A stretch of DNA of 64,000 nucleotides from Laetmonice hystrix (Eukaryota), in the NCBI GenBank assembly GCA_965235115.1, contig OZ249448.1, forward strand, positions 23,684,001 to 23,748,000, in the 5' to 3' direction. The notes under the pieces are model-generated. The model ran no database searches. It had not been told where the DNA came from and saw nothing but the letters and a program-made list of their open reading frames with translations. Positions 1,613 to 23,037 of this stretch are shown one piece after another (positions within the stretch are counted from its first letter, which is position 1; every line of letters begins with the position of its first letter). The translations under genes and the position numbers were made by a program.

Positions 1613-3119
1613 GGTATTATTGTCTATGTACAGAGGAGGGACACATTCTCAATCACTCTGTATGTATTCTCACGCTATCAGCCACATGTATACACTCGTT
1701 GTATAGATCTTGCCTAGCGTAGGTGGTCTTCCCCGCGTACTCCAGTTTCCACCACCAGTAGAACTGACCACGAATAGACCCTGGCTGTAGGGGAAGCGTA
1801 AAATCTCAATCCATAACGGAATCCCCTCACTGTCCCTCAGCATAATCGATATTTCAGTACTTTGACATTTTTTGTGCAATCATTGATATGAGCAAAATAT
1901 GCTCGGCATTCAGTCCAATGTAGGCATCGAAAATCTCCGCTCCAAGTTCAATATAAATTAAGTAGTAAATCGAAGGTGCATTGTTTCAACTTGAACGACA
2001 AAATAAACACAGTGTAGACCTATCTATGTCTCTACTTTGAACCTTTACTATAAATTATATCGAACATAAGTGAACGATACGTAAATCGGTGAATATCTAC
2101 CACTACCGTGCAGCAATGAGCGCGTTTGGTGGTGCATGAGCGAACCCTGTCTCAGTTCAGCGATAAGAAACGCCTTTAGTTCCGATTCCTCCCACCAGGT
2201 GGCCTTGCTGCCGACCTTCTCGAAACGATCTGGCAAAAAGGCCAGAAAACCGTGACATGCATGCTTCCGTTTGGCGCTCAAAAGCTGTACAATGGGAACT
2301 TATCGTTCAACAAAAACAAAACAAAAAAGTCTAAAAAATATTCGATAAGATACTGCTTCAAAATATACACGTGAAATGTCAAGGACAATCATACTAAAAT
2401 ATGCTTAGGTCGTAAAATGTGCCTTACCCCCCCCCCCCCCCCGGAAAAAAGCCGTCATGTCGAAAAGGCTCACGGAAGAAAATGTAGTTGGACAAGTAGA
2501 GAAAGCGAGTTGGCGATGGTGGGACTCGCCACCGCTTGGTCACATCTATATGCGGTGAAAATTCGATGTCAAACCAATTTAGTCTTGGAATATTCACCAA
2601 TGGGAGAAATTATAGCATATTTTGGCCACTATGAAAAGTAGCATATATGCTTATATAGCGCCTTATCAGATTAAGTATATTAAACTCATCTAATGTTAGA
2701 TGTAAAAAAACCCGTGGCTTTAATTGTTATGTCGACACAGTGTGAGTTTATAGAGACAGAGTCACTGCACGAAGGTCAAATTTCCATATTAACTTTGTGA
2801 AAATTCCCCCCAATTCGGATGTTAAGAGAAATGGTATGGTGCAGAGGATGTTCACGCTCACCGCCCACCTCAAACGACTACACACTACCATCCCCCACAA
2901 ACGACATCCTCTCGGCTCCCAACGGCGCCACTAACCAGGAGTTTTAGAATAAATCAAACCACATTACTGCATCAAGAAAATTCTCTGGTCAAATCGGTTT
3001 TCCATTTTCCTTTTTTTCAAAGGCGGGGTACGTCCGAAGAGGAATCTCGATTTGGTGGTCAACGTTGGAAACAATAAGAGAAGGCACGTGTAACGTTACC
3101 GGTCACGGGGTCACCCTAC

Positions 3120-3229
3120 CTGTTGTACATAAGTATATCAGGGTTCCAGATCTCCTTAGAGGGGAGACGAATACTGTGAACACCCCCGTACTCTGATTCG
3201 TTCCAAGTCATCTTGTAGTCTGCCCACTC
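3120..3229 (-). CDS. nAChR subunit, exon 4 variant d
   Basis: ccttactgcag|GAG, 110 nt, donor AACAG|GTAGGG. Translates EWADYKMTWNESEYGGVHSIRLPSKEIWNPDILMYN(S). Confidence 0.93.
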
Positions 3230-3268
3230 CTGCAGTAAGGAATCACATGGGTCAGGACAGACGCCTAC

Positions 3269-3378
3269 CTGTTATACATAAGAATATCTGGGTTCCAGAT
3301 CATTTTCGACGGAAGTCGTATACTATGTATGTCTTCGTATTCCGACTCGTTCCAGCCCAGCTTGTAGTCCTTCCATTC
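3269..3378 (-). CDS. nAChR subunit, exon 4 variant c
   Basis: cttacttgcag|GAA, 110 nt, donor AACAG|GTAGGC. Translates EWKDYKLGWNESEYEDIHSIRLPSKMIWNPDILMYN(S). Confidence 0.92.
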
Positions 3379-3415
3379 CTGCAAGTAAGCATGTCTCAGT
3401 TTGGATCGAGCCTAC

Positions 3416-3525
3416 CTGTTGTACATGAGTATATCGGGTGTCCACACCAGTGTGGATGGCAGCCGTATACTATGCACGCCAGCGAACTCTGACTCGTCCC
3501 ATCCAAGTTTGTAGTCCTTCCATTC
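3416..3525 (-). CDS. nAChR subunit, exon 4 variant b
   Basis: cttggttgcag|GAA, 110 nt, donor AACAG|GTAGGC. Translates EWKDYKLGWDESEFAGVHSIRLPSTLVWTPDILMYN(S). Confidence 0.92.
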
Positions 3526-3575
3526 CTGCAACCAAGCACACGCACAGGGGGCTCAGTACACATCCCAACCCCTAC

Positions 3576-3685
3576 CTGTTGTACATAAGTATATCCGGTG
3601 TCCATACTAACGTCGAAGGCAGCCGAACGCTGCCTACGTCACCGTATTCCGTTTCGTTCCATTTCAACTTGTAATCCGTCCAGAT
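3576..3685 (-). CDS. nAChR subunit, exon 4 variant a
   Basis: Long pyrimidine tract ...gttttgtcgtttttag|ATC, 110 nt, phase 0 to 2, donor AACAG|GTAGGG. Translates IWTDYKLKWNETEYGDVGSVRLPSTLVWTPDILMYN(S), with the loop A WxPDxxxYN motif. Confidence 0.93.
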
Positions 3686-5116
3686 CTAAAAACGACAAAA
3701 CACGGTGAAACGGGCAGACGACAAAAGTAAAGCCCATTCGGCACTTTCCGTACGCCGACCTCCACACGCCCCGGGTCAATGGGACCCCCACTTCGGCTCT
3801 GGTTGAGAAGATACATTGTGTAAAGGGCTTATCAATTAAACTATGCGATTTCTGCTCATCTACATTGGCCAGCCGAGAGGCAAAACGAACTGAGAGCAAA
3901 GGAAGTATCTAGACATGGGTGGGCTCGTGTGGAACTCAGTGACGTCACATTAAACACCAGCATGGAGTCGATGGACTGAGAGCAAAACCTAATTTTGCCA
4001 CAGAATTAAAGTTGTCATAGATAAATGAGATCTGTGGGGTTAAATGTCAACCGACTAAAGGAATAAAGGAATTAGTCTACATATATAGCGAAAACATAGT
4101 ATGCCATGCACTGCAAAGAAACTACTGGAGATAAATGGTTAGCTTGGGCATGTATGTACTAGGTAGGGGTTGGGCGCAATGTTAACATTTGAAAACAATA
4201 GGCCTATTCATAATCATACAGTTATCAACAGTAATAAACTTTCAAATTCAGTAGGTCATGAAGAGGAAGTTAGACTTGATTCTGTCACAAAAATTGGCGA
4301 TCTCTTCTTCGCGATTTCTCTGTTACATTTTAAGTCTGCTGCACAGTAGGACAAGCTATGGTAAACACCTGTTTACGGGCACAAGTTTGGCGAAAAGCAA
4401 GCGAATCCGACTTTTAGTAAACAGGAAAAGTAACGTGGTGAGGACAAACCTTTTTGTGACAGTTCTCGTGGGCTTTAGAGTTTTACTGATACAAGACAAA
4501 TATTTTTCTCAATGATATATTTAAACGGTTTTCCTATTGATTTAGAGAGGAATGATTTGGCAGATTGCTGAGAATGTCAGGAGATCACAATACATAACCT
4601 GGTATCACATGTATCACATCATTTCATGTATGGCATTCGAGTGAAACTTTTGAGGATATCAGTTTTGTTCAGTCTTCAATGAGTTCAAATGGAATCTCGA
4701 CCACAAGCCCGATACAACTGACCCTGTATTAACCACACACAAAACACACAATATCAACGTTTTTCTTCCTGTTTCGTTGTAGTCCTGCCACAATGTGCTC
4801 ATGTAATCTATATAAATATGCAGTTGACCACACCCAAGCTGTTTTATTATAACGGTTAACAGACTACGTGGTGACAGAGAATACTAGATAGACTGTTAGA
4901 TGTTAGATGATAACACTTTGAGAGGTTCGAAGTGGTAAAACTGATACCGACAGTTAAATAAATAGACTGTTAGACGCATTCAGCATTATTATAATACCTT
5001 AACCATGTTAGACACAGATCGTTTTAGAAATTGTAACAGTGTACATTATGACGATCGATCTAATTCAACAATTTACTTTTCTTGGCCACTCACTAATAAT
5101 TCCTGCGTATACTCAC

Positions 5117-5161
5117 GTAGTTCAGCCACATGTTCGTATGCAGCATCTCGTTCTTTTCATC
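5117..5161 (-). CDS. nAChR subunit, exon 3 (45 nt, single copy; contains loop D Trp)
   Basis: catttccag|GATGAAAAGAACGAGATGCTGCATACGAACATGTGGCTGAACTAC|gtgagt translates to DEKNEMLHTNMWLNY. This is the canonical 45-nt phase 0-0 nAChR exon (DEKNQ..TN.WL). Confidence 0.95.
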
Positions 5162-6779
5162 CTGGAAATGCAAGGCAGGAATGCAACAGAATATAATTTA
5201 GTATATACCATGCCTAATAAAAATCAAAGTTTTGTTCACCTTTGATGAGGTGCTACCATGGAACGTGAAGAATATGTACATACAAGTCTCTCTATAATCG
5301 TTACCACTTCTTTTTAGTTTCTTTCATTGATGACATAGTCCTTCATGCGAATGGTTTCATTTGGAATATTGAAACGAAATAAACATGATTCACTAAAAGA
5401 GAAAATTTTAAATTTTAAGAAGCCTTAGGAATTAAAAAAAATAAGAGGGAAGTACCCACCCAAAATATGCATGTATATATAGAGATGCACATCTTACTTT
5501 TGCCATTAGTAATTTCAAACGTCTCACAATGATAGACATAAAATACGGTTCATCAACACTCGCATTTACTGCGCCTTTTAGATTTATGCAATATTTCAAA
5601 AGCTCCCTTCGGAAGTCTATCGTCGAAAAGTAAATAATCCTATCGCATACTTATATAGAATGAAAGAATTGATGAATTACTTCCACTCTGTCACAGAGAG
5701 GTTTAACGGTGGTGATTCCAATCGATAGTTTACACAGAAAATGAGAAGGGCACACTGAATGGCCTCAATACTCGCACACATGATACCAATCGTTTAGAAC
5801 AAACTGAAAGTCTCTCCTCTCTTTACACGACCATCCGAGTGGCATACATTATTCAGCTCTGTCATGTTCATTTGCTCTTTTACTTCAAAGGCCCCGCTGG
5901 CATTACATATACACTAGGATCACACAGAAAACAGCGCATATTTGTGGCCGAGGAATAATATCACCGACTCATCTCAGTCTACAAAATGGATTATTCGAAT
6001 TTAAGCGACAGCGACTGGGGCTGCCTCTAGTGGACACCGTGCCAAACACTGCCATGGCAGAATACGGATCGTCCCGGGACCTGAGGCCTTGGCAGAATGA
6101 ATGAATTATTCTCTTGGCGTTAATTGTGCTAAAACAAATGGTCGTACAATTGTCAAGATCCTAATTTCATTAAAGGCTGCCCATTGAGCGGCGATCATTC
6201 GCCGACATTGTCGTGAATTTTAATGAAATCCTTGTTGTTTTTATCCATGGCTGATCGTGAAAAGCGCCTTATTATTTTTGTTTGTTAAACATAACGCACT
6301 TTTATTCATGATGCTGAGGCGAATACTTAATACTGAACAGTTGCCCTTGGGAAAATTAGTAATATGGAATAACAACAATGAAATCAGTTGATTTTGTTGG
6401 ATTATACTTTCACAAATGTTGCATGACACACAGAATTCTTTGTATCGTTTACCATTATGATTGACTTCATTGTCACTATGAGTATCATAAAAAATTCAGG
6501 GTTAGCTTCGTGATTAATGGCACCACATTGTCGTTTTAACAAGGAATATTAAGCCTATCACTTTTTAAAAATCTCAAATATTCACTTGTAACCATTTATT
6601 TTCTATAAACTTATATACTCGTCAAGCTGATAGGTTTACGAATAAATAAAATCACTTCCACGATAAGAGATGGAAACGTTGTTGATGCGGCAATCAGTAC
6701 AAAAGGCAATAAGTAGTTAACACAAGAGAAGAGGGGGGTTGTTTAGGGGTGTCTGGCATACAGTTAGTAAGGCGCCTAC

Positions 6780-6925
6780 CACGTCAATGATTTGCTGAAG
6801 AGCGATACCAAATTTGACCTCAATGGAATCCATCTCCTTGGGAACGGGACGCGAGAGTCGGTTGTAGTTTCGTCTGCCGAATATGTCATTTATGAGTCTC
6901 TCCTCGTGCGGACCCTGCAGGCTCT
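6780..6925 (-). CDS. nAChR subunit, exon 2 variant b (partial CDS)
   Basis: Pyrimidine tract, CACTAAC/GACTAAT branch-like motifs, acceptor ttcacag|AG, 146 nt, phase 1 to 0, donor GTG|GTAGGC. Translates (E)SLQGPHEERLINDIFGRRNYNRLSRPVPKEMDSIEVKFGIALQQIIDV. Confidence 0.93.
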
Positions 6926-7499
6926 CTGTGAACCACCATATTAGTCGCGTTAGTGCCAGACAGAGAGAAAACACAGCAAGACGTCAAGACAATGCAGACG
7001 TTCACCACGCACACATCATCAAACACAAAACAAGGGTGGCAGGTCCAGCAGCATCAGCAGCAACCGGGCAGCGTGTTAGTGTGGCAACCACGCCCATCTG
7101 TTATCTGTAGAGAACGCGTAATCAGGTAAGCAAGAGGGATTAAGGGAGCCGCCGTTGTCTCCGAAGAGCGATTAGACAGTTTGCAGCAATTGCGACTGTC
7201 CCTCGCCTGTCACCTACGATTACCGCTAGGCAGTGCTCGAGGTCAATAGGCCGTGAAGACACTCGTGCACGCCAAAGGGCGAAGGTGGTTTTGTTTTTGG
7301 GGTCTTTCAATACATCTAAAGTCACCAACGTCCAGATATCGATAGAAAGACGGAACTGAATGTAATGGCGGGAGGGTCCGTCCAATGTACACGTATCGAC
7401 ATGTTTCCTTGTCTAATTTTTGGGTGATTCAGAACTTTTTGGTGATTGCAGTAGGATTTCGGATAGGGTAAAGTGCAGGGAGACAAAAGCGGCTTACCC

Positions 7500-7680
7500 T
7501 TAACGACCAACAATAGTTAAACGTTTATTAAGGTTGTTAACGATATTGTTAATTTACCTGGCCGTGAATGGAAGACCTTCGGTTAATGGGATCGTTATTA
7601 ATCAAAGACTTCTTGTTAACGTTAACGTTGTTGAAGTTAACGATATCGTTAACAACCAGACCGTAGTAAAACAGGCCCTG
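7500..7680. mobile_element. Remnant of a non-autonomous DNA element (Harbinger/MITE-like) with an internal inverted repeat, in the intron between exons 2a and 2b
   Basis: ggttgttaacgatattgttaa (~7532) is the reverse complement, with 1 mismatch, of ttaacgatatcgttaacaacc (~7637). It ends in a TIR-like acaggccctg; the partner TIR was not found. Confidence 0.4.
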
Positions 7681-7759
7681 GATGGGTAAATATATTAAAC
7701 AAACGGTAATGGGACAAGAATCTCTTGGCCTCGGTGATTCTTAAATAAGGTAAGGTGGC

Positions 7760-7812
7760 AATGGTATGGTCACAATGGTATGGGCAAAATGGTATGGGCA
7801 AAATGGTATGGT
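7760..7812. repeat. 14-bp tandem repeat x~4
   Basis: Unit aatggtatgggcaa. Confidence 0.8.
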
Positions 7813-7939
7813 TACAAGGTCGTGTGTTCCCCCACAGCCTCGCATGCTCTCGGGTGGCAATGGATAAATCTCGCGAACCGCGAGAGGGAGAAACCCAGAG
7901 TGTTTTGCTGCGTCATTGCACCGGAAGCCAACGTCTTAC

Positions 7940-8079
7940 CACGTCGATGATTTGCTGAAGGGAAATGCCGAAGTTAACCTCGACGGCGTCCGATTCCTTT
8001 TCTACTGGTCGTGCTAACTTATTGTAGCGACTGAAGATATCCTCTATAAGCCGTTCCTCGTGCTGTCCTGCTCGGGCGC
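7940..8079 (-). CDS. nAChR subunit (alpha7-like group), exon 2 variant a (partial CDS)
   Basis: Acceptor ...ttgcccacacag|GC, 140 nt, phase 1 to 0, donor GTG|GTAAGA. Translates (G)ARAGQHEERLIEDIFSRYNKLARPVEKESDAVEVNFGISLQQIIDV, the nAChR N-terminal helix to beta1 (compare Drosophila alpha6 GPHEKRLL...RPV.NESEPLEVKFGLTLQQIIDV). Confidence 0.93.
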
Positions 8080-11000
8080 CTGTGTGGGCAAACGGTGAGA
8101 AATACCAAGAACACAATCGATTAAACAAAAGGTGTGGTGAATATAGGCCTATATTATTTCACTAAAAAGGCAGTGACATTGATTAAAACTGTCTACTTTA
8201 TCATTTATGTGGACCAAACTCAGTGTGATATTTTATTTATCTATCTGATCCCTTGGGAAGATATCAGCTAAGCAGTGGCGTACCCAGAAACTGGACCCAG
8301 GGGGGTGCTGGAAATAACCTTTAAAATTTTTTGGGGGGTAAATTGAGGGGGTGCTTGAGCACCCCAAGCACCCCCTGAGACTACGAATCGGACAAATGGG
8401 TTTCCTCCATCGACCCTTAATCCGCATGTATCAAGTGCATGCCATGTGAGGTCCCCATTCATCGTGGTATCAAACTTTAACTTTTAAAGTAGCAGTATTG
8501 ATGCCACCATCCCTGTGCCTGTACGGCATGGCATCCTGAACACTTTAATAGATGTAGCACGCATGCTGAAATAAAACCTTACAACGGAAGTCGATTAGAC
8601 ATACCAATGCAGCATGCAACATGTGGGATTTTTACTGTCTACGAACATGTCATAATATTAGTCACATATAACAAAGCGAAGACATGTTATAAATTCAAAG
8701 ATATCAAGCCATCACAGCCTCACAGGAAAGATGAACAATTTTCTCAGCATTATCGTTTTCAGAAACTGAAGGTCAACAGTCATTTGTAGCTGTAACCATG
8801 GAAACGACCTTCGTTATACACAAAACGTAAATGTATCCGATATCAGCAAAGTCGAGCAATTAACAAGCTGTCTGATGCACACCTACATAACTGATATAAA
8901 ATTCCGTTTTTAACGAAACTTCGGACCGTCTTGAGTTTATTTTGATGACTGCACTGTAGGCGTGTCGCTAAACTCATCAAATAGCTGTGTGGGCACAGAG
9001 TTTGAGTGATTACTGCCCACGCCAAGGTAAATAGCGTGATCATAGGGTGATTCCCTGAATAATACATATCTTACAGACGGCTAAAGCTATTTGTTGCAAC
9101 GGAGGATGCAGCAAAGAGCCTATTTTAAACACTTCACAGATGATCGATTTTACAAACATTCAAACTGTGCTTCATATATTAAATTTTCCCCAGTTAATCG
9201 CAATTTATACACCAGATATGGTTAAACCGTTGTCCCAAACCCCCGTCCGAACAATTCCCGCTGAACACATCCTGTAAATGATGACTCACCGCTAGGAGTC
9301 GCCACCAGTCCGTCCCAGATTGAATCCAGTAAATCTAATTTTACATTATTCGCACGTAATCGACCAACGGGGGAGTATCGTTGAGAGAAGTTGGGAGAGA
9401 ACCGCCATATTGAAACTCCCGGTCTCATTAGAGCGGTAATTGCCTTACAATTACCGCTCAATCGGAGATCTGCGTTTCAGGGAAATACCGCACTCAATGA
9501 AGGAAATACCGCACTTAATGTAGGCACGGCAGGTACCGCGGCAGTCGCCTACTCCCCGGCGGAAATTGTGCTCAGTGGTCAGGTTTCGGTCAAATCATTG
9601 CTGCCAGTGTGTGCAGTGACTAATTTCTTGTGTACGGATATAAACGGGGAGGAGGTAAGAAGGGATGGAGTCGGCTAAAGGATGTTAGATGGATATGGTT
9701 TTAATTTTTGTATTTATTGCATTTTTGTTGATATACGTTATACATAGATGCAAGTCAGCAGGAATGTGTTTACATAATGCTGCCCCTTAAAGTCTAACAC
9801 AGACATCAAAATTAATATGAAATTTAGTGCCAGATCTTGATGATACATGTAATTTGTTGTTGTTTAACCTAAAGGAGCGGTTATTGTACAAGAACTTGAA
9901 CTGTATGTAAGCCAATTCCCCTAATGACGTCATCAGGGGCAATGTTAAAGAATAGGCGGGAGTGAGACTGTAATGTGGCGCGCGATTCTAATTGTCAATT
10001 TTTTTCTAAATTGAGAGAACTTCTCAGAAAACCTATCAGGGACACATCTAGAACTCAAAGTGATCTATCTAGATCAGTAAAGTTACCCATGTGATGTCAG
10101 TTGGACTTTAAGAATCGTGTAAGAATGATCCTGAGCGCAACCTTTGGCTGGTCGTAAGAGGCGAGGAATGGGGCGAGGGCTGGTTGGGGGAGTGGTCGGG
10201 TGTCGGATTGCAGAATTATCTGTGTGGCACAGATTGGTCCTTCCAGCACCATTTCTCTCATTGACCCTCCCCAGTGCTCCACAACAGGGTCGTCAAATGC
10301 TGGTGTGTCCGGTCATGTTTGTGTGTCTGGACATATAAATGTACACTTGCCATGTGTTCGGAAATCGAAAGGGATCGCCTCGCGATGGTGTTTCATGACT
10401 AAATATAAGTTTTATTGTTTTGTGATTTGTGAGCTACAATCTGCACAATCACTACATCAGTCATGGTGCTGGCATGCCCACAAACATCCATAGAGCTCCC
10501 CAGTACCACGGTACTTCACCCCATCCCAACCGACTGCACCAAGACAACAAACTTCCCAGCACAAATCGACTTAATGTTAAGCCACTAAGATTTGAACACA
10601 GTGAATTGTAGCTGGTATGTCGTGCCGGTGGCCGACTGAATAGCGCGCATAATCGGCCACGCATCATTGAGGCCCGGTCAATAAAGTCCGCGAGCTTCCG
10701 GAAGATTGTACCGAATAGCTCTGTCGTAACTTCGATCTCGACCTCGCTCCATCCCCACACCCCAACCCCCACCTACACACACCCAACCCCAACACCCAAC
10801 ATTTTCTGAAAACTGTGCTTGAAAGTAGTTCAGACATGTTGTTCATTCCGAGAGAGCGCCAGGAGAAAAAAGATCCAATATTTCAGATTTTCTTGCGGTA
10901 TGGCCTGAGCATGCAGAAAACGGTGGTCAAGGGATCGGGCACTACAGACCCCAATATCCAATAGCTTGAAATGACAAGATTTTAATTATCCTTCAAATGG

Positions 11001-18005: not shown

Positions 18006-18216
18006 NNNNNNNNNNNNNNNNNNNNNNNNNNNNNNNNNNNNNNNNNNNNNNNNNNNNNNNNNNNNNNNNNNNNNNNNNNNNNNNNNNNNNNNNNNNNNNN
18101 NNNNNNNNNNNNNNNNNNNNNNNNNNNNNNNNNNNNNNNNNNNNNNNNNNNNNNNNNNNNNNNNNNNNNNNNNNNNNNNNNNNNNNNNNNNNNNNNNNNN
18201 NNNNNNNNNNNNNNNN
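18006..18216. other. Assembly gap (N run), followed by a (GA)n microsatellite to ~18312
   Basis: Run of n followed by gagagaga. Confidence 0.98.
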
Positions 18217-22639: not shown

Positions 22640-23037
22640 NNNNNNNNNNNNNNNNNNNNNNNNNNNNNNNNNNNNNNNNNNNNNNNNNNNNNNNNNNNNN
22701 NNNNNNNNNNNNNNNNNNNNNNNNNNNNNNNNNNNNNNNNNNNNNNNNNNNNNNNNNNNNNNNNNNNNNNNNNNNNNNNNNNNNNNNNNNNNNNNNNNNN
22801 NNNNNNNNNNNNNNNNNNNNNNNNNNNNNNNNNNNNNNNNNNNNNNNNNNNNNNNNNNNNNNNNNNNNNNNNNNNNNNNNNNNNNNNNNNNNNNNNNNNN
22901 NNNNNNNNNNNNNNNNNNNNNNNNNNNNNNNNNNNNNNNNNNNNNNNNNNNNNNNNNNNNNNNNNNNNNNNNNNNNNNNNNNNNNNNNNNNNNNNNNNNN
23001 NNNNNNNNNNNNNNNNNNNNNNNNNNNNNNNNNNNNN
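22640..23037. other. Assembly gap (N run)
   Basis: Run of n; ORFs spanning it are artefacts. Confidence 0.98.

What the first reader, a model, noticed from the sequence alone, without database searches (positions are those of the whole stretch)
6780..8079. Duplicated exon 2 (140 vs 146 nt) needs a different exclusion mechanism
Both copies are phase 1 to 0, so including both frameshifts. The 1014-nt intron between them is easily spliceable, so steric exclusion cannot apply. The copies differ strongly (GQHEERLIEDIFSRYNKLARPVEKESDAV vs GPHEERLINDIFGRRNYNRLSRPVPKEMDSI, a 2-aa insertion) and also change the residues around the signal-peptidase site (GARAG vs ESLQG). Selection could be through RNA pairing, NMD, or separate first exons. 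I found no signal-peptide exon between the two copies.
Basis: partly seen in the sequence, partly recalled or inferred. Interest (0 to 1): 0.7.

Follow-up and report, generated by a model that had tools for sequence, protein, structure and literature searches.

The report
Two conserved alternative exon 2 copies
An alpha7-type nicotinic acetylcholine receptor gene carries two old, intact versions of the exon for the receptor's N-terminal helix, kept in tandem in nine species, so it very probably makes two receptor variants by using one version per transcript; this is a new example of a known trick and no RNA data were available to confirm it.

Summary
On the minus strand, exon 2a (8079-7940, 140 nt) and exon 2b (6925-6780, 146 nt) are paralogous phase 1-to-0 exons of an alpha7-like nAChR gene, each with AG/GT sites, separated by a 1014-nt intron.

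They are each other's closest relatives in the genome. Synonymous sites between them are saturated (pS 0.91), yet 70% of residues are identical (pN 0.20).

The same tandem cluster, with 2 or 3 copies, is present and intact in eight other species' contigs. All 20 copies across the nine species have a length of 2 mod 3. The closest relative shows clear 1:1 orthologues of 2a and 2b, each under purifying selection. So neither copy is a relic.

- **Frame:** including both copies gives a stop 12 codons into 2b. Skipping both gives an immediate TGA.
- **Steric exclusion:** excluded. The introns between copies are 245-1346 nt.
- **U12 incompatibility:** excluded.
- **Competing RNA pairing:** no conserved intronic element and no stem above shuffled controls.
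- **Internal first exon:** no plausible candidate.

The most likely mechanism is ordinary regulated splice-site choice, with the reading frame and NMD as the filter. No RNA data exist for this organism, so exclusivity is inferred. Exon 1 was not found. The scan had already noted this stretch (s1-349209, s1-349250).

The parts
7940..8079 (-). Exon 2a, the upstream variant: 140 nt, phase 1 to 0. It encodes the 46-residue form of the N-terminal helix plus strand beta1.
   Evidence: AG acceptor and GTAAGA donor. Pfam Neur_chan_LBD positions 1-40, 36.9 bits. Orthologue in L019:2550-2687, 83% aa identity, pN 0.097 against pS 0.75. The 3 variants seen in the DNA contigs (7994, 8006, 8075) are all third-position synonymous changes (codon positions are my own count).
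6926..7939 (-). Intron between the copies, 1014 nt. It has a normal branch site (cactaac) about 30 nt upstream of the 2b acceptor.
   Evidence: It holds no plausible ATG/signal-peptide/phase-1 donor exon, no Rfam or tRNA match, and no similarity to the orthologous introns.
7532..7657 (.). Dispersed MITE-like repeat with 21-24 nt terminal inverted repeats, inserted in the intron between the copies.
   Evidence: Inverted repeat I1. 58 matches to this stretch elsewhere in the genome at 75-91% identity, a lower bound. Raised contig depth. It is the only stem in the region that approaches or exceeds the shuffled controls.
6780..6925 (-). Exon 2b, the downstream variant: 146 nt, phase 1 to 0. This is the 48-residue form, with a 2-residue insertion at the end of the helix.
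   Evidence: AG acceptor and GTAGGC donor. Pfam Neur_chan_LBD positions 1-40, 25.8 bits. Orthologue in L019:3554-3697, 81% aa identity, pN 0.186 against pS 0.96. The YNR(L)xRP signature is shared by the last copy in 8 of 9 species.
5162..6779 (-). Intron between exon 2b and exon 3, 1618 nt.
   Evidence: No block is conserved with L019, L009 or L010.
5117..5161 (-). Constitutive exon 3: 45 nt, DEKNEMLHTNMWLNY, phase 0 to 0. It is the acceptor for either exon 2 variant.
   Evidence: The peptide is identical in L009 and L019, with 85-90% nt identity.
3120..3685 (-). Context only: four tandem 110-nt exon 4 copies of the same gene. This is the subject of another finding.
   Evidence: Four copies are also present in L019, but only one in L009, L010, L021 and L022.

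Best explanation
Exons 2a and 2b form an ancient, conserved cluster of alternative exons in an alpha7-like nicotinic receptor subunit gene. Each transcript that makes protein carries exactly one of them, giving two receptor variants. The variants differ in the mature N-terminus, in the end of the N-terminal alpha-helix (a 2-residue insertion in 2b) and in the helix-to-beta1 loop; the beta1 strand is kept. Exclusivity is most likely not enforced by a dedicated structural device. Both exons are ordinary U2-type exons that share one upstream exon 1, and cell-specific factors and splice-site competition decide which is used. Products with both or neither are out of frame, stop at once, and are removed by nonsense-mediated decay. 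Shown here: the anatomy, the frame arithmetic, conservation and purifying selection, and the exclusion of steric and U12 mechanisms. Inferred: that both are used in RNA, that exon 1 is shared, that NMD is the filter, and that trans-acting factors make the choice.
For: (1) The gene is alpha7-like: it has the Cys-loop, YECCPEPY, TM1-TM4 exons and Pfam LBD and membrane domains, and its best solved relatives are alpha7.
(2) The two copies are each other's nearest relatives in the genome.
(3) pS is 0.91 (saturated) against pN 0.20 between the copies.
(4) Tandem exon-2 clusters with intact AG/GT sites are present in eight other species' contigs: L019, L009, L010, L011, L021 and L022 with 2 copies, and L012 and L014 with 3.
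(5) All 20 cluster copies are 140, 143, 146 or 152 nt, which is 2 mod 3 in every case. Any number of copies other than one breaks the frame.
(6) In the closest relative, 2a and 2b have clear 1:1 orthologues: 83% and 81% within type against 76% and 67% across type. Each shows pN (0.10, 0.19) far below pS (0.75, 0.96), while constitutive exon 5 has pN 0.057.
(7) Joining 2a to 2b gives a stop at codon 12 of 2b. Joining exon 1 to exon 3 gives xGA TGA.
(8) The first two bases of every copy would give Asp, Glu, Gly or Ala if exon 1 ends in G, and Asp or Glu in 18 of 20 copies. That fits one shared exon 1.
(9) The intron between the copies in L011 is only 245 nt, which leaves no room for a promoter, a first exon and an intron.
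Against: There is no RNA evidence at all. The only runs that hold this DNA are DNA contigs, and no spliced protein fragment containing exon 2 was found in the protein collection. Exon 1 was not identified in the window or in the closest relative, so a shared first exon is an inference. The tree of the copies is unresolved; AU tests reject neither one old duplication nor lineage-specific pairs. In L009 and L011 the 3' halves of the two copies look homogenised, which blurs orthology. Failing to find RNA pairing does not exclude short or lineage-specific stems.
Confidence: 0.72

Rival explanations
1. Exclusivity is enforced by competing RNA secondary structures of the Dscam / 14-3-3 zeta type. 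A docking site in a flanking intron would pair with one selector next to each variant and activate only that exon.
For: It is the established mechanism for several arthropod clusters with long introns (my own knowledge; cited as an option in PMC1919356). Two weak pairings touch splice sites: 7945-7928 (2a donor) with 6987-6970 (upstream of the 2b acceptor), and 6783-6765 (2b donor) with 6274-6256.
Against: In all four species tested, no stem among the three introns scores above block-shuffled controls, apart from a transposon hairpin and GT-repeats. No intronic block is conserved even with the closest relative, upstream, between or downstream of the copies, whereas known docking sites are the best-conserved intronic elements. 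A 16-nt cross-species motif turned out to be a chance match with no complement.
Confidence: 0.13
2. Each variant has its own promoter and first exon (1a-2a and 1b-2b), so the choice is made at transcription initiation and not by splicing.
For: Exon 1 was not found, so its number and position are unknown.
Against: No ATG exon with a hydrophobic stretch and a usable phase-1 donor lies between the copies in four species. The introns between copies in L011 (245 nt) and L014 (321 nt) are too short to hold one. A transcript from an upstream exon 1 would still have to skip 2b, so this does not remove the need for exclusion.
Confidence: 0.1
3. One copy is an unused relic: a pseudo-exon, or a remnant of a neighbouring gene. 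The gene then has one real exon 2.
For: Only the lack of RNA data. The 2b copy has a weaker pyrimidine tract and donor (GTAGGC), and its Pfam score (25.8 bits) falls just under the cut-off of 26.
Against: Both copies keep an open frame, AG/GT sites, the same phase and 70% residue identity, although synonymous sites are saturated. Both are kept in nine species, and each orthologue pair shows pN far below pS. All three variants seen in 2a are synonymous. No other nAChR exon lies nearby on this chromosome.
Confidence: 0.04

Closest known systems
Insect nAChR alpha6 mutually exclusive exons 3a/3b and 8a/8b/8c (Drosophila, Tribolium, Apis and others; PMC1919356)
   Same: Same receptor group: the alpha7-like / Dalpha5-7 clade. 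Tandem duplicated exons in the extracellular domain are swapped one at a time to diversify a single subunit gene, and the arrangement is conserved over long evolutionary times.
   Different: A different exon is duplicated: exon 2 (N-terminal helix and beta1) instead of the 45-nt exon 3 or the TM2 exon. The insect exon 3 copies are 45 nt each, so joint inclusion keeps the frame; here every copy is 2 mod 3, so the frame itself forbids joint inclusion. The insect case is shown by cDNA; this one is not. A paralogue in this genome (L018) does carry a tandem exon 3 pair like the insect gene.
The exon 4 cluster of the same gene (four 110-nt copies at 3120-3685; earlier finding s1-349214)
   Same: Same gene and the same principle: tandem, intact, frame-breaking copies. 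It is also conserved in the closest relative.
   Different: The exon 4 copies are separated by micro-introns of about 37-50 nt, where steric exclusion is plausible. The exon 2 copies are 245-1346 nt apart. The exon 2 cluster is phylogenetically wider: L009, L010, L021 and L022 have two exon 2 copies but a single exon 4.
Dscam exon 4/6/9 and 14-3-3 zeta exon 5 clusters (docking site / selector RNA pairing)
   Same: Clusters of homologous alternative exons, separated by introns long enough to be spliced.
   Different: No docking-like conserved intronic element and no above-background complementarity was found here.
Vertebrate mutually exclusive pairs filtered by frame and NMD and steered by protein factors (for example FGFR2 IIIb/IIIc; my own knowledge)
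   Same: Two homologous exons, a long intron between them, U2-type splice sites, and double inclusion or double skipping that gives a premature stop.
   Different: The regulators are unknown here, and no RNA evidence is available.

Membership tests
alpha7-like nicotinic acetylcholine receptor subunit (Cys-loop receptor) | Neur_chan_LBD and Neur_chan_memb domains | tested here: met
   Pfam: exon 5 ORF 84.8 bits (LBD), last exon 54.9 bits (membrane region). Exon 2a 36.9 bits and exon 2b 25.8 bits, both on LBD positions 1-40.
alpha7-like nicotinic acetylcholine receptor subunit (Cys-loop receptor) | A Cys-x13-Cys loop and a vicinal Cys pair in loop C (alpha-type subunit) | tested here: met
   CTINIRWFPFDDQLC in exon 5 and YECCPEPY in the next exon.
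alpha7-like nicotinic acetylcholine receptor subunit (Cys-loop receptor) | Closer to alpha7 than to other subunit classes | tested here: met
   With the exon 5 ORF, the best solved structures are all alpha7 (E 8e-26), ahead of beta3, alpha2 and alpha4. No full phylogeny was made.
Cluster of mutually exclusive exons arisen by tandem exon duplication | Adjacent homologous exons of the same phase and similar length, each with its own splice sites | tested here: met
   140 and 146 nt, both phase 1 to 0, AG/GT sites, 70% aa identity.
Cluster of mutually exclusive exons arisen by tandem exon duplication | Including both or none destroys the reading frame | tested here: met
   2a+2b stops at codon 12 of 2b, and skipping both gives xGA TGA. 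All 20 copies in nine species are 2 mod 3.
Cluster of mutually exclusive exons arisen by tandem exon duplication | Both copies maintained by selection | tested here: met
   pS 0.91 against pN 0.20 between the copies. For orthologues, pN is 0.10 and 0.19 against pS 0.75 and 0.96. The cluster is kept in nine species.
Cluster of mutually exclusive exons arisen by tandem exon duplication | Transcripts contain exactly one copy | not testable with these tools
   No RNA run holds the locus. The runs that were laid are DNA contigs. No spliced protein fragment with exon 2 was found.
Steric-hindrance exclusion (alpha-tropomyosin type) | The intron between the copies, or the donor-to-branch-point distance, is too short to splice (under about 60 nt) | tested here: not met
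   The intron is 1014 nt here and 245-1346 nt in the other species. A cactaac branch site lies about 30 nt from the 2b acceptor.
U2/U12 spliceosome incompatibility | One flanking intron has U12-type consensus sites | tested here: not met
   All donors are GTAAG, GTAGG, GTATG or GTACG with AG acceptors. No ATATCC or GTATCC donor was found.
Docking-site / selector competing RNA structures (Dscam type) | A conserved intronic docking element complementary to a selector beside each variant | tested here: inconclusive
   No conserved intronic block and no stem above shuffled controls in four species. Short or non-conserved stems, and elements near the unidentified exon 1, cannot be excluded.

The most novel reading that the evidence does not exclude
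Swapping the N-terminal helix is a conserved splicing switch for receptor biogenesis or partner choice: which subunits or chaperones the alpha7-type subunit assembles with. It would not alter the agonist site. Combined with the exon 4 cluster it would give 8 extracellular-domain isoforms from one gene. Exclusivity would be achieved by a mechanism that leaves no conserved intronic footprint, for example exonic elements or protein factors acting on the exon ends, which are similar within a species.
Probability: 0.25. Interest if true: 0.55.

Novelty: new member of a known kind. Interest (0 to 1): 0.36.

Why it matters
Tandem exon duplication with mutually exclusive use is a well-known way to diversify ion channels. 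Within nicotinic receptors it is documented for insect alpha6 (exons 3 and 8; PMC1919356) and, from my own knowledge, alpha4.

In the held library I found no report of an alternative exon 2 in any nAChR. The survey of the lophotrochozoan nAChR expansion does not treat alternative splicing.

If the two variants are expressed, this lineage diversifies alpha7-type receptors at the N-terminal helix. From my own knowledge, that element is implicated in receptor assembly. Together with the four exon 4 versions, this would give up to eight isoforms.

The pair is also a clean natural case for asking how exclusivity is achieved. Steric, U12 and conserved-docking explanations all fail, and nine independent versions of the locus are available for comparison.

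Tried and rejected
- **RNA evidence.** The single run search returned only three runs, of one sample and of unrecorded kind. Laying them showed unspliced contigs spanning the introns, so they are DNA and say nothing about splicing.
- **Spliced protein fragments.** A search with the exon 5 ORF gave 111 fragments. Three are spliced across the exon 4-to-5 junction, and none contains exon 2.
- **Exon 1.** I scanned for an ATG, a hydrophobic stretch and a phase-1 GT in the window up to 64000 and in the orthologous loci. I also ran tblastx and blastn of 12 kb upstream in the closest relative against 56 kb of the window. Nothing convincing or conserved came out. The N gaps at 18006-18216 and 22640-23037 were left alone.
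- **RNA pairing.** A windowed duplex-fold scan timed out. An ungapped stem scan in four species gave nothing above shuffles apart from a transposon hairpin and GT repeats. The inverted repeats are at chance level. A 16-nt motif shared with L019 has no partner.
- **Intron conservation.** None was found with any of the orthologous loci.
- **Tree of the copies.** With 48 columns it is unresolved. AU tests give p 0.13 for 'last copies form one clade' and p 0.21 for 'the window pair forms one clade'.
- **P0151 locus.** This 2b-like protein has no DNA available because the sample file is too large.
- **Organism and the other contigs.** Accession searches in the paper library found nothing, and the tools give no taxon. 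'Annelid' rests only on the earlier agent's note.
- **Rfam and tRNA scans of 5000-10000.** Both were empty.

Full report
**Observation.** The finding lies on the minus strand.
- Exon 2a is 8079-7940: cacag|GC...GACGTG|gtaaga, 140 nt.
- Exon 2b is 6925-6780: cacag|AG...GACGTG|gtaggc, 146 nt.
- The intron between them, 7939-6926, is 1014 nt.
32 of 46 aligned residues are identical, and 2b has two extra residues.
- Both copies match positions 1-40 of Pfam Neur_chan_LBD. They align to the N-terminal helix and strand beta1 of solved alpha2, alpha4 and alpha7 receptors. The 2b insertion sits at the end of the helix.

**The gene.**
- Downstream lie a 45-nt exon 3 (5161-5117, DEKNEMLHTNMWLNY) and four tandem 110-nt exon 4 copies (3685-3120).
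- Just beyond the window edge lie an exon with the Cys-loop, an exon with YECCPEPY and TM1, then TM2, TM3, and a last exon with TM4.
- The best solved relatives of the Cys-loop exon are all alpha7.
- The window is G000:C18:23684001-23748000.

**Is the duplication real and old?**
- In the whole genome each copy's best hit is the other (73%). The next paralogue, on C1, scores 61-64%.
- Between the copies only 13 of the 32 identical residues use the same codon. By Nei-Gojobori, pS is 0.91 (saturated) and pN is 0.20.
- DNA contigs of three runs of one sample span both copies and the intron in a single piece.
- The three variants those contigs show inside 2a (7994, 8006, 8075) are all synonymous third-position changes by my count. 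None falls in 2b.

**Other species.** ORF fragments in the protein collection led to contigs of eight other, unnamed species that carry the orthologous gene.
- Two copies: L019/L020, L009, L010, L011, L021 and L022.
- Three copies: L012 and L014. In L014 the two upstream copies are a recent duplicate that includes the flanking intron.
- Every copy has an AG two bases ahead of the frame and a GT donor.
- Lengths are 140, 143, 146 or 152 nt, so all 20 cluster copies are 2 mod 3.
- L016/L017, a more distant gene whose exon 2 branches outside all the cluster copies, has a single exon 2 within 3.2 kb.
- The introns between copies are 245, 321, 508, 559, 635, 743, 864, 888, 1014, 1136 and 1346 nt.

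**Orthology of the copies.**
- The closest relative is L019 (exon 5 is 90% identical at the protein level). It has a 46-residue copy, AKAGQHEERLIDDLFDGYNKLARPV..., that is 83% identical to 2a.
- It also has a 48-residue copy, SNQGPHEERLIEDIFSGRKYNRLARPV..., that is 81% identical to 2b.
- The cross-type comparisons give 76% and 67%.
- Even between these two species synonymous sites are saturated (pS 0.75, 0.96; exon 5 0.69).
- pN is 0.097 for 2a, 0.186 for 2b and 0.057 for exon 5. Each copy has therefore been under purifying selection on its own, somewhat relaxed compared with a constitutive exon.
- Across species, the last copy carries YNR before the RP motif in 8 of 9 species. None of the 11 upstream copies does; 9 of those 11 have K at that position.
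- The 46-residue form occurs only in upstream copies.
- This points to one old duplication. However, the 48-column tree is unresolved, and AU tests reject neither that nor lineage-specific pairs.
- In L009 and L011 the 3' halves of the two copies are unusually alike at third positions (0.71 and 0.62). That suggests partial gene conversion.
- L009, L010, L021 and L022 have two exon 2 copies but a single exon 4, so the exon 2 cluster is more widespread than the exon 4 cluster.

**Mechanism.**
- *Frame.* After 2a the frame is 0, and 2b read from its first base stops at codon 12 (RACRVRTRRDS*). Joining exon 1 to exon 3 reads xGA TGA. Only single inclusion is productive. The same arithmetic holds in all nine species, including the three-copy clusters.
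- *Steric hindrance.* Excluded by the intron lengths and by a normal branch site next to the 2b acceptor.
- *U12 incompatibility.* Excluded. All sites are U2-type.
- *Competing RNA structures.* I found no intronic block conserved between any two species, including the closest pair, upstream, between or downstream of the copies. In four species no stem scored above shuffled controls, apart from a transposon hairpin (7657-7532) and GT repeats. The two weak pairings that touch splice sites are at chance level.
- *Separate first exons.* No ATG exon with a hydrophobic stretch and a usable phase-1 donor lies between the copies in four species. The 245-nt intron of L011 has no room for one. The first two bases of all copies give Asp, Glu, Gly or Ala if exon 1 ends in G, as expected for one shared exon 1.
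- *Splice-site strength.* Upstream copies mostly have GTAAG(A/G) donors. The last copy often has a weaker one (GTAGGC twice, GTATGG, GTAAAA, GTATGT, GTATGC). In the window 2b also has the poorer pyrimidine tract. This fits regulated use of 2b against a stronger 2a, but it is only a tendency.

**What is missing.**
- No RNA run holds the locus, and no spliced fragment with exon 2 was found.
- Exon 1 was not found.
- The organism and the eight relatives are unnamed. 'Annelid' is an earlier agent's untested suggestion.

**Comparison and verdict.**
- The nearest known case is the insect alpha6 gene, with exons 3a/3b and 8a-c (PMC1919356).
- That paper quotes the estimate that 99.4% of tandemly duplicated exons are used exclusively, and lists the same candidate mechanisms.
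- In the held library I found no report of an alternative exon 2 in an nAChR, nor any treatment of splicing in the lophotrochozoan nAChR survey.
- This is therefore a new member of a known kind. It is real, old and conserved, but not surprising, and its exclusion mechanism is most simply the reading frame plus NMD on top of regulated splice-site choice.

Noticed in passing
L018:6121-6165 and 6269-6313 (G000:C1, about 13,700,120-13,700,312): The closest paralogue is a GPHEKRLL-type gene like insect alpha6/alpha7. It has a single exon 2 but two tandem 45-nt exon 3 copies (DEKNQILTSNIWLNM and DEKNQIINTNIWLNL). Each has AG/GT sites, and they lie about 100 nt apart. This is the same arrangement as insect alpha6 exons 3a/3b, which suggests either a very old shared cluster or convergence.
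   Followed up: partly
L021:11526-19499: In one related species, six copies of the exon encoding loop C (CCPEPY) and TM1 follow one another over 8 kb downstream of exon 5. They are either a further alternative-exon cluster or partial tandem gene copies.
   Followed up: no
window 8192-8400: A stretch 110-320 nt upstream of the exon 2a acceptor has a summed contig depth of 30,000-88,000, against about 30-60 elsewhere. Many contigs end at 8271-8273 and 8317-8319. It is an extremely abundant dispersed repeat, with no tRNA or Rfam match.
   Followed up: partly
window 7532-7657: A MITE-like element with 21-24 nt inverted ends (GGTTGTTAACGATAT...) sits in the intron between the copies. 58 matches to it lie elsewhere in the genome at 75-91% identity. 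It is absent from the orthologous introns.
   Followed up: partly
window 7740-7815: A short tandem repeat (ggtatgg.caa.at units) shows a 22-nt length difference at 7794 between the assembly and the contigs of two runs.
   Followed up: no
L014:1550-1687 and 2011-2148: The two upstream exon 2 copies of this species share nearly identical flanking intron sequence. They are a recent extra duplication, so the copy number of the cluster is still changing.
   Followed up: partly
L009:9334-9405 with 10115-10186; L011:2722-2793 with 3113-3184: Within these species the 3' halves of the two exon 2 copies are much more alike at third codon positions (0.71 and 0.62) than the 5' parts (0.47 and 0.13). This suggests partial gene conversion, or an RNA-level constraint near the donor. 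In the window the last 21 nt of the two copies differ at one base.
   Followed up: partly
P0007 (383 aa): A predicted protein of a related species ends in an exon-2-like peptide (GKHEEKLIDEIFVTRKLNKYARPVENENDAVD) placed after TM4. This is probably a gene model that runs into the next tandem nAChR gene.
   Followed up: no
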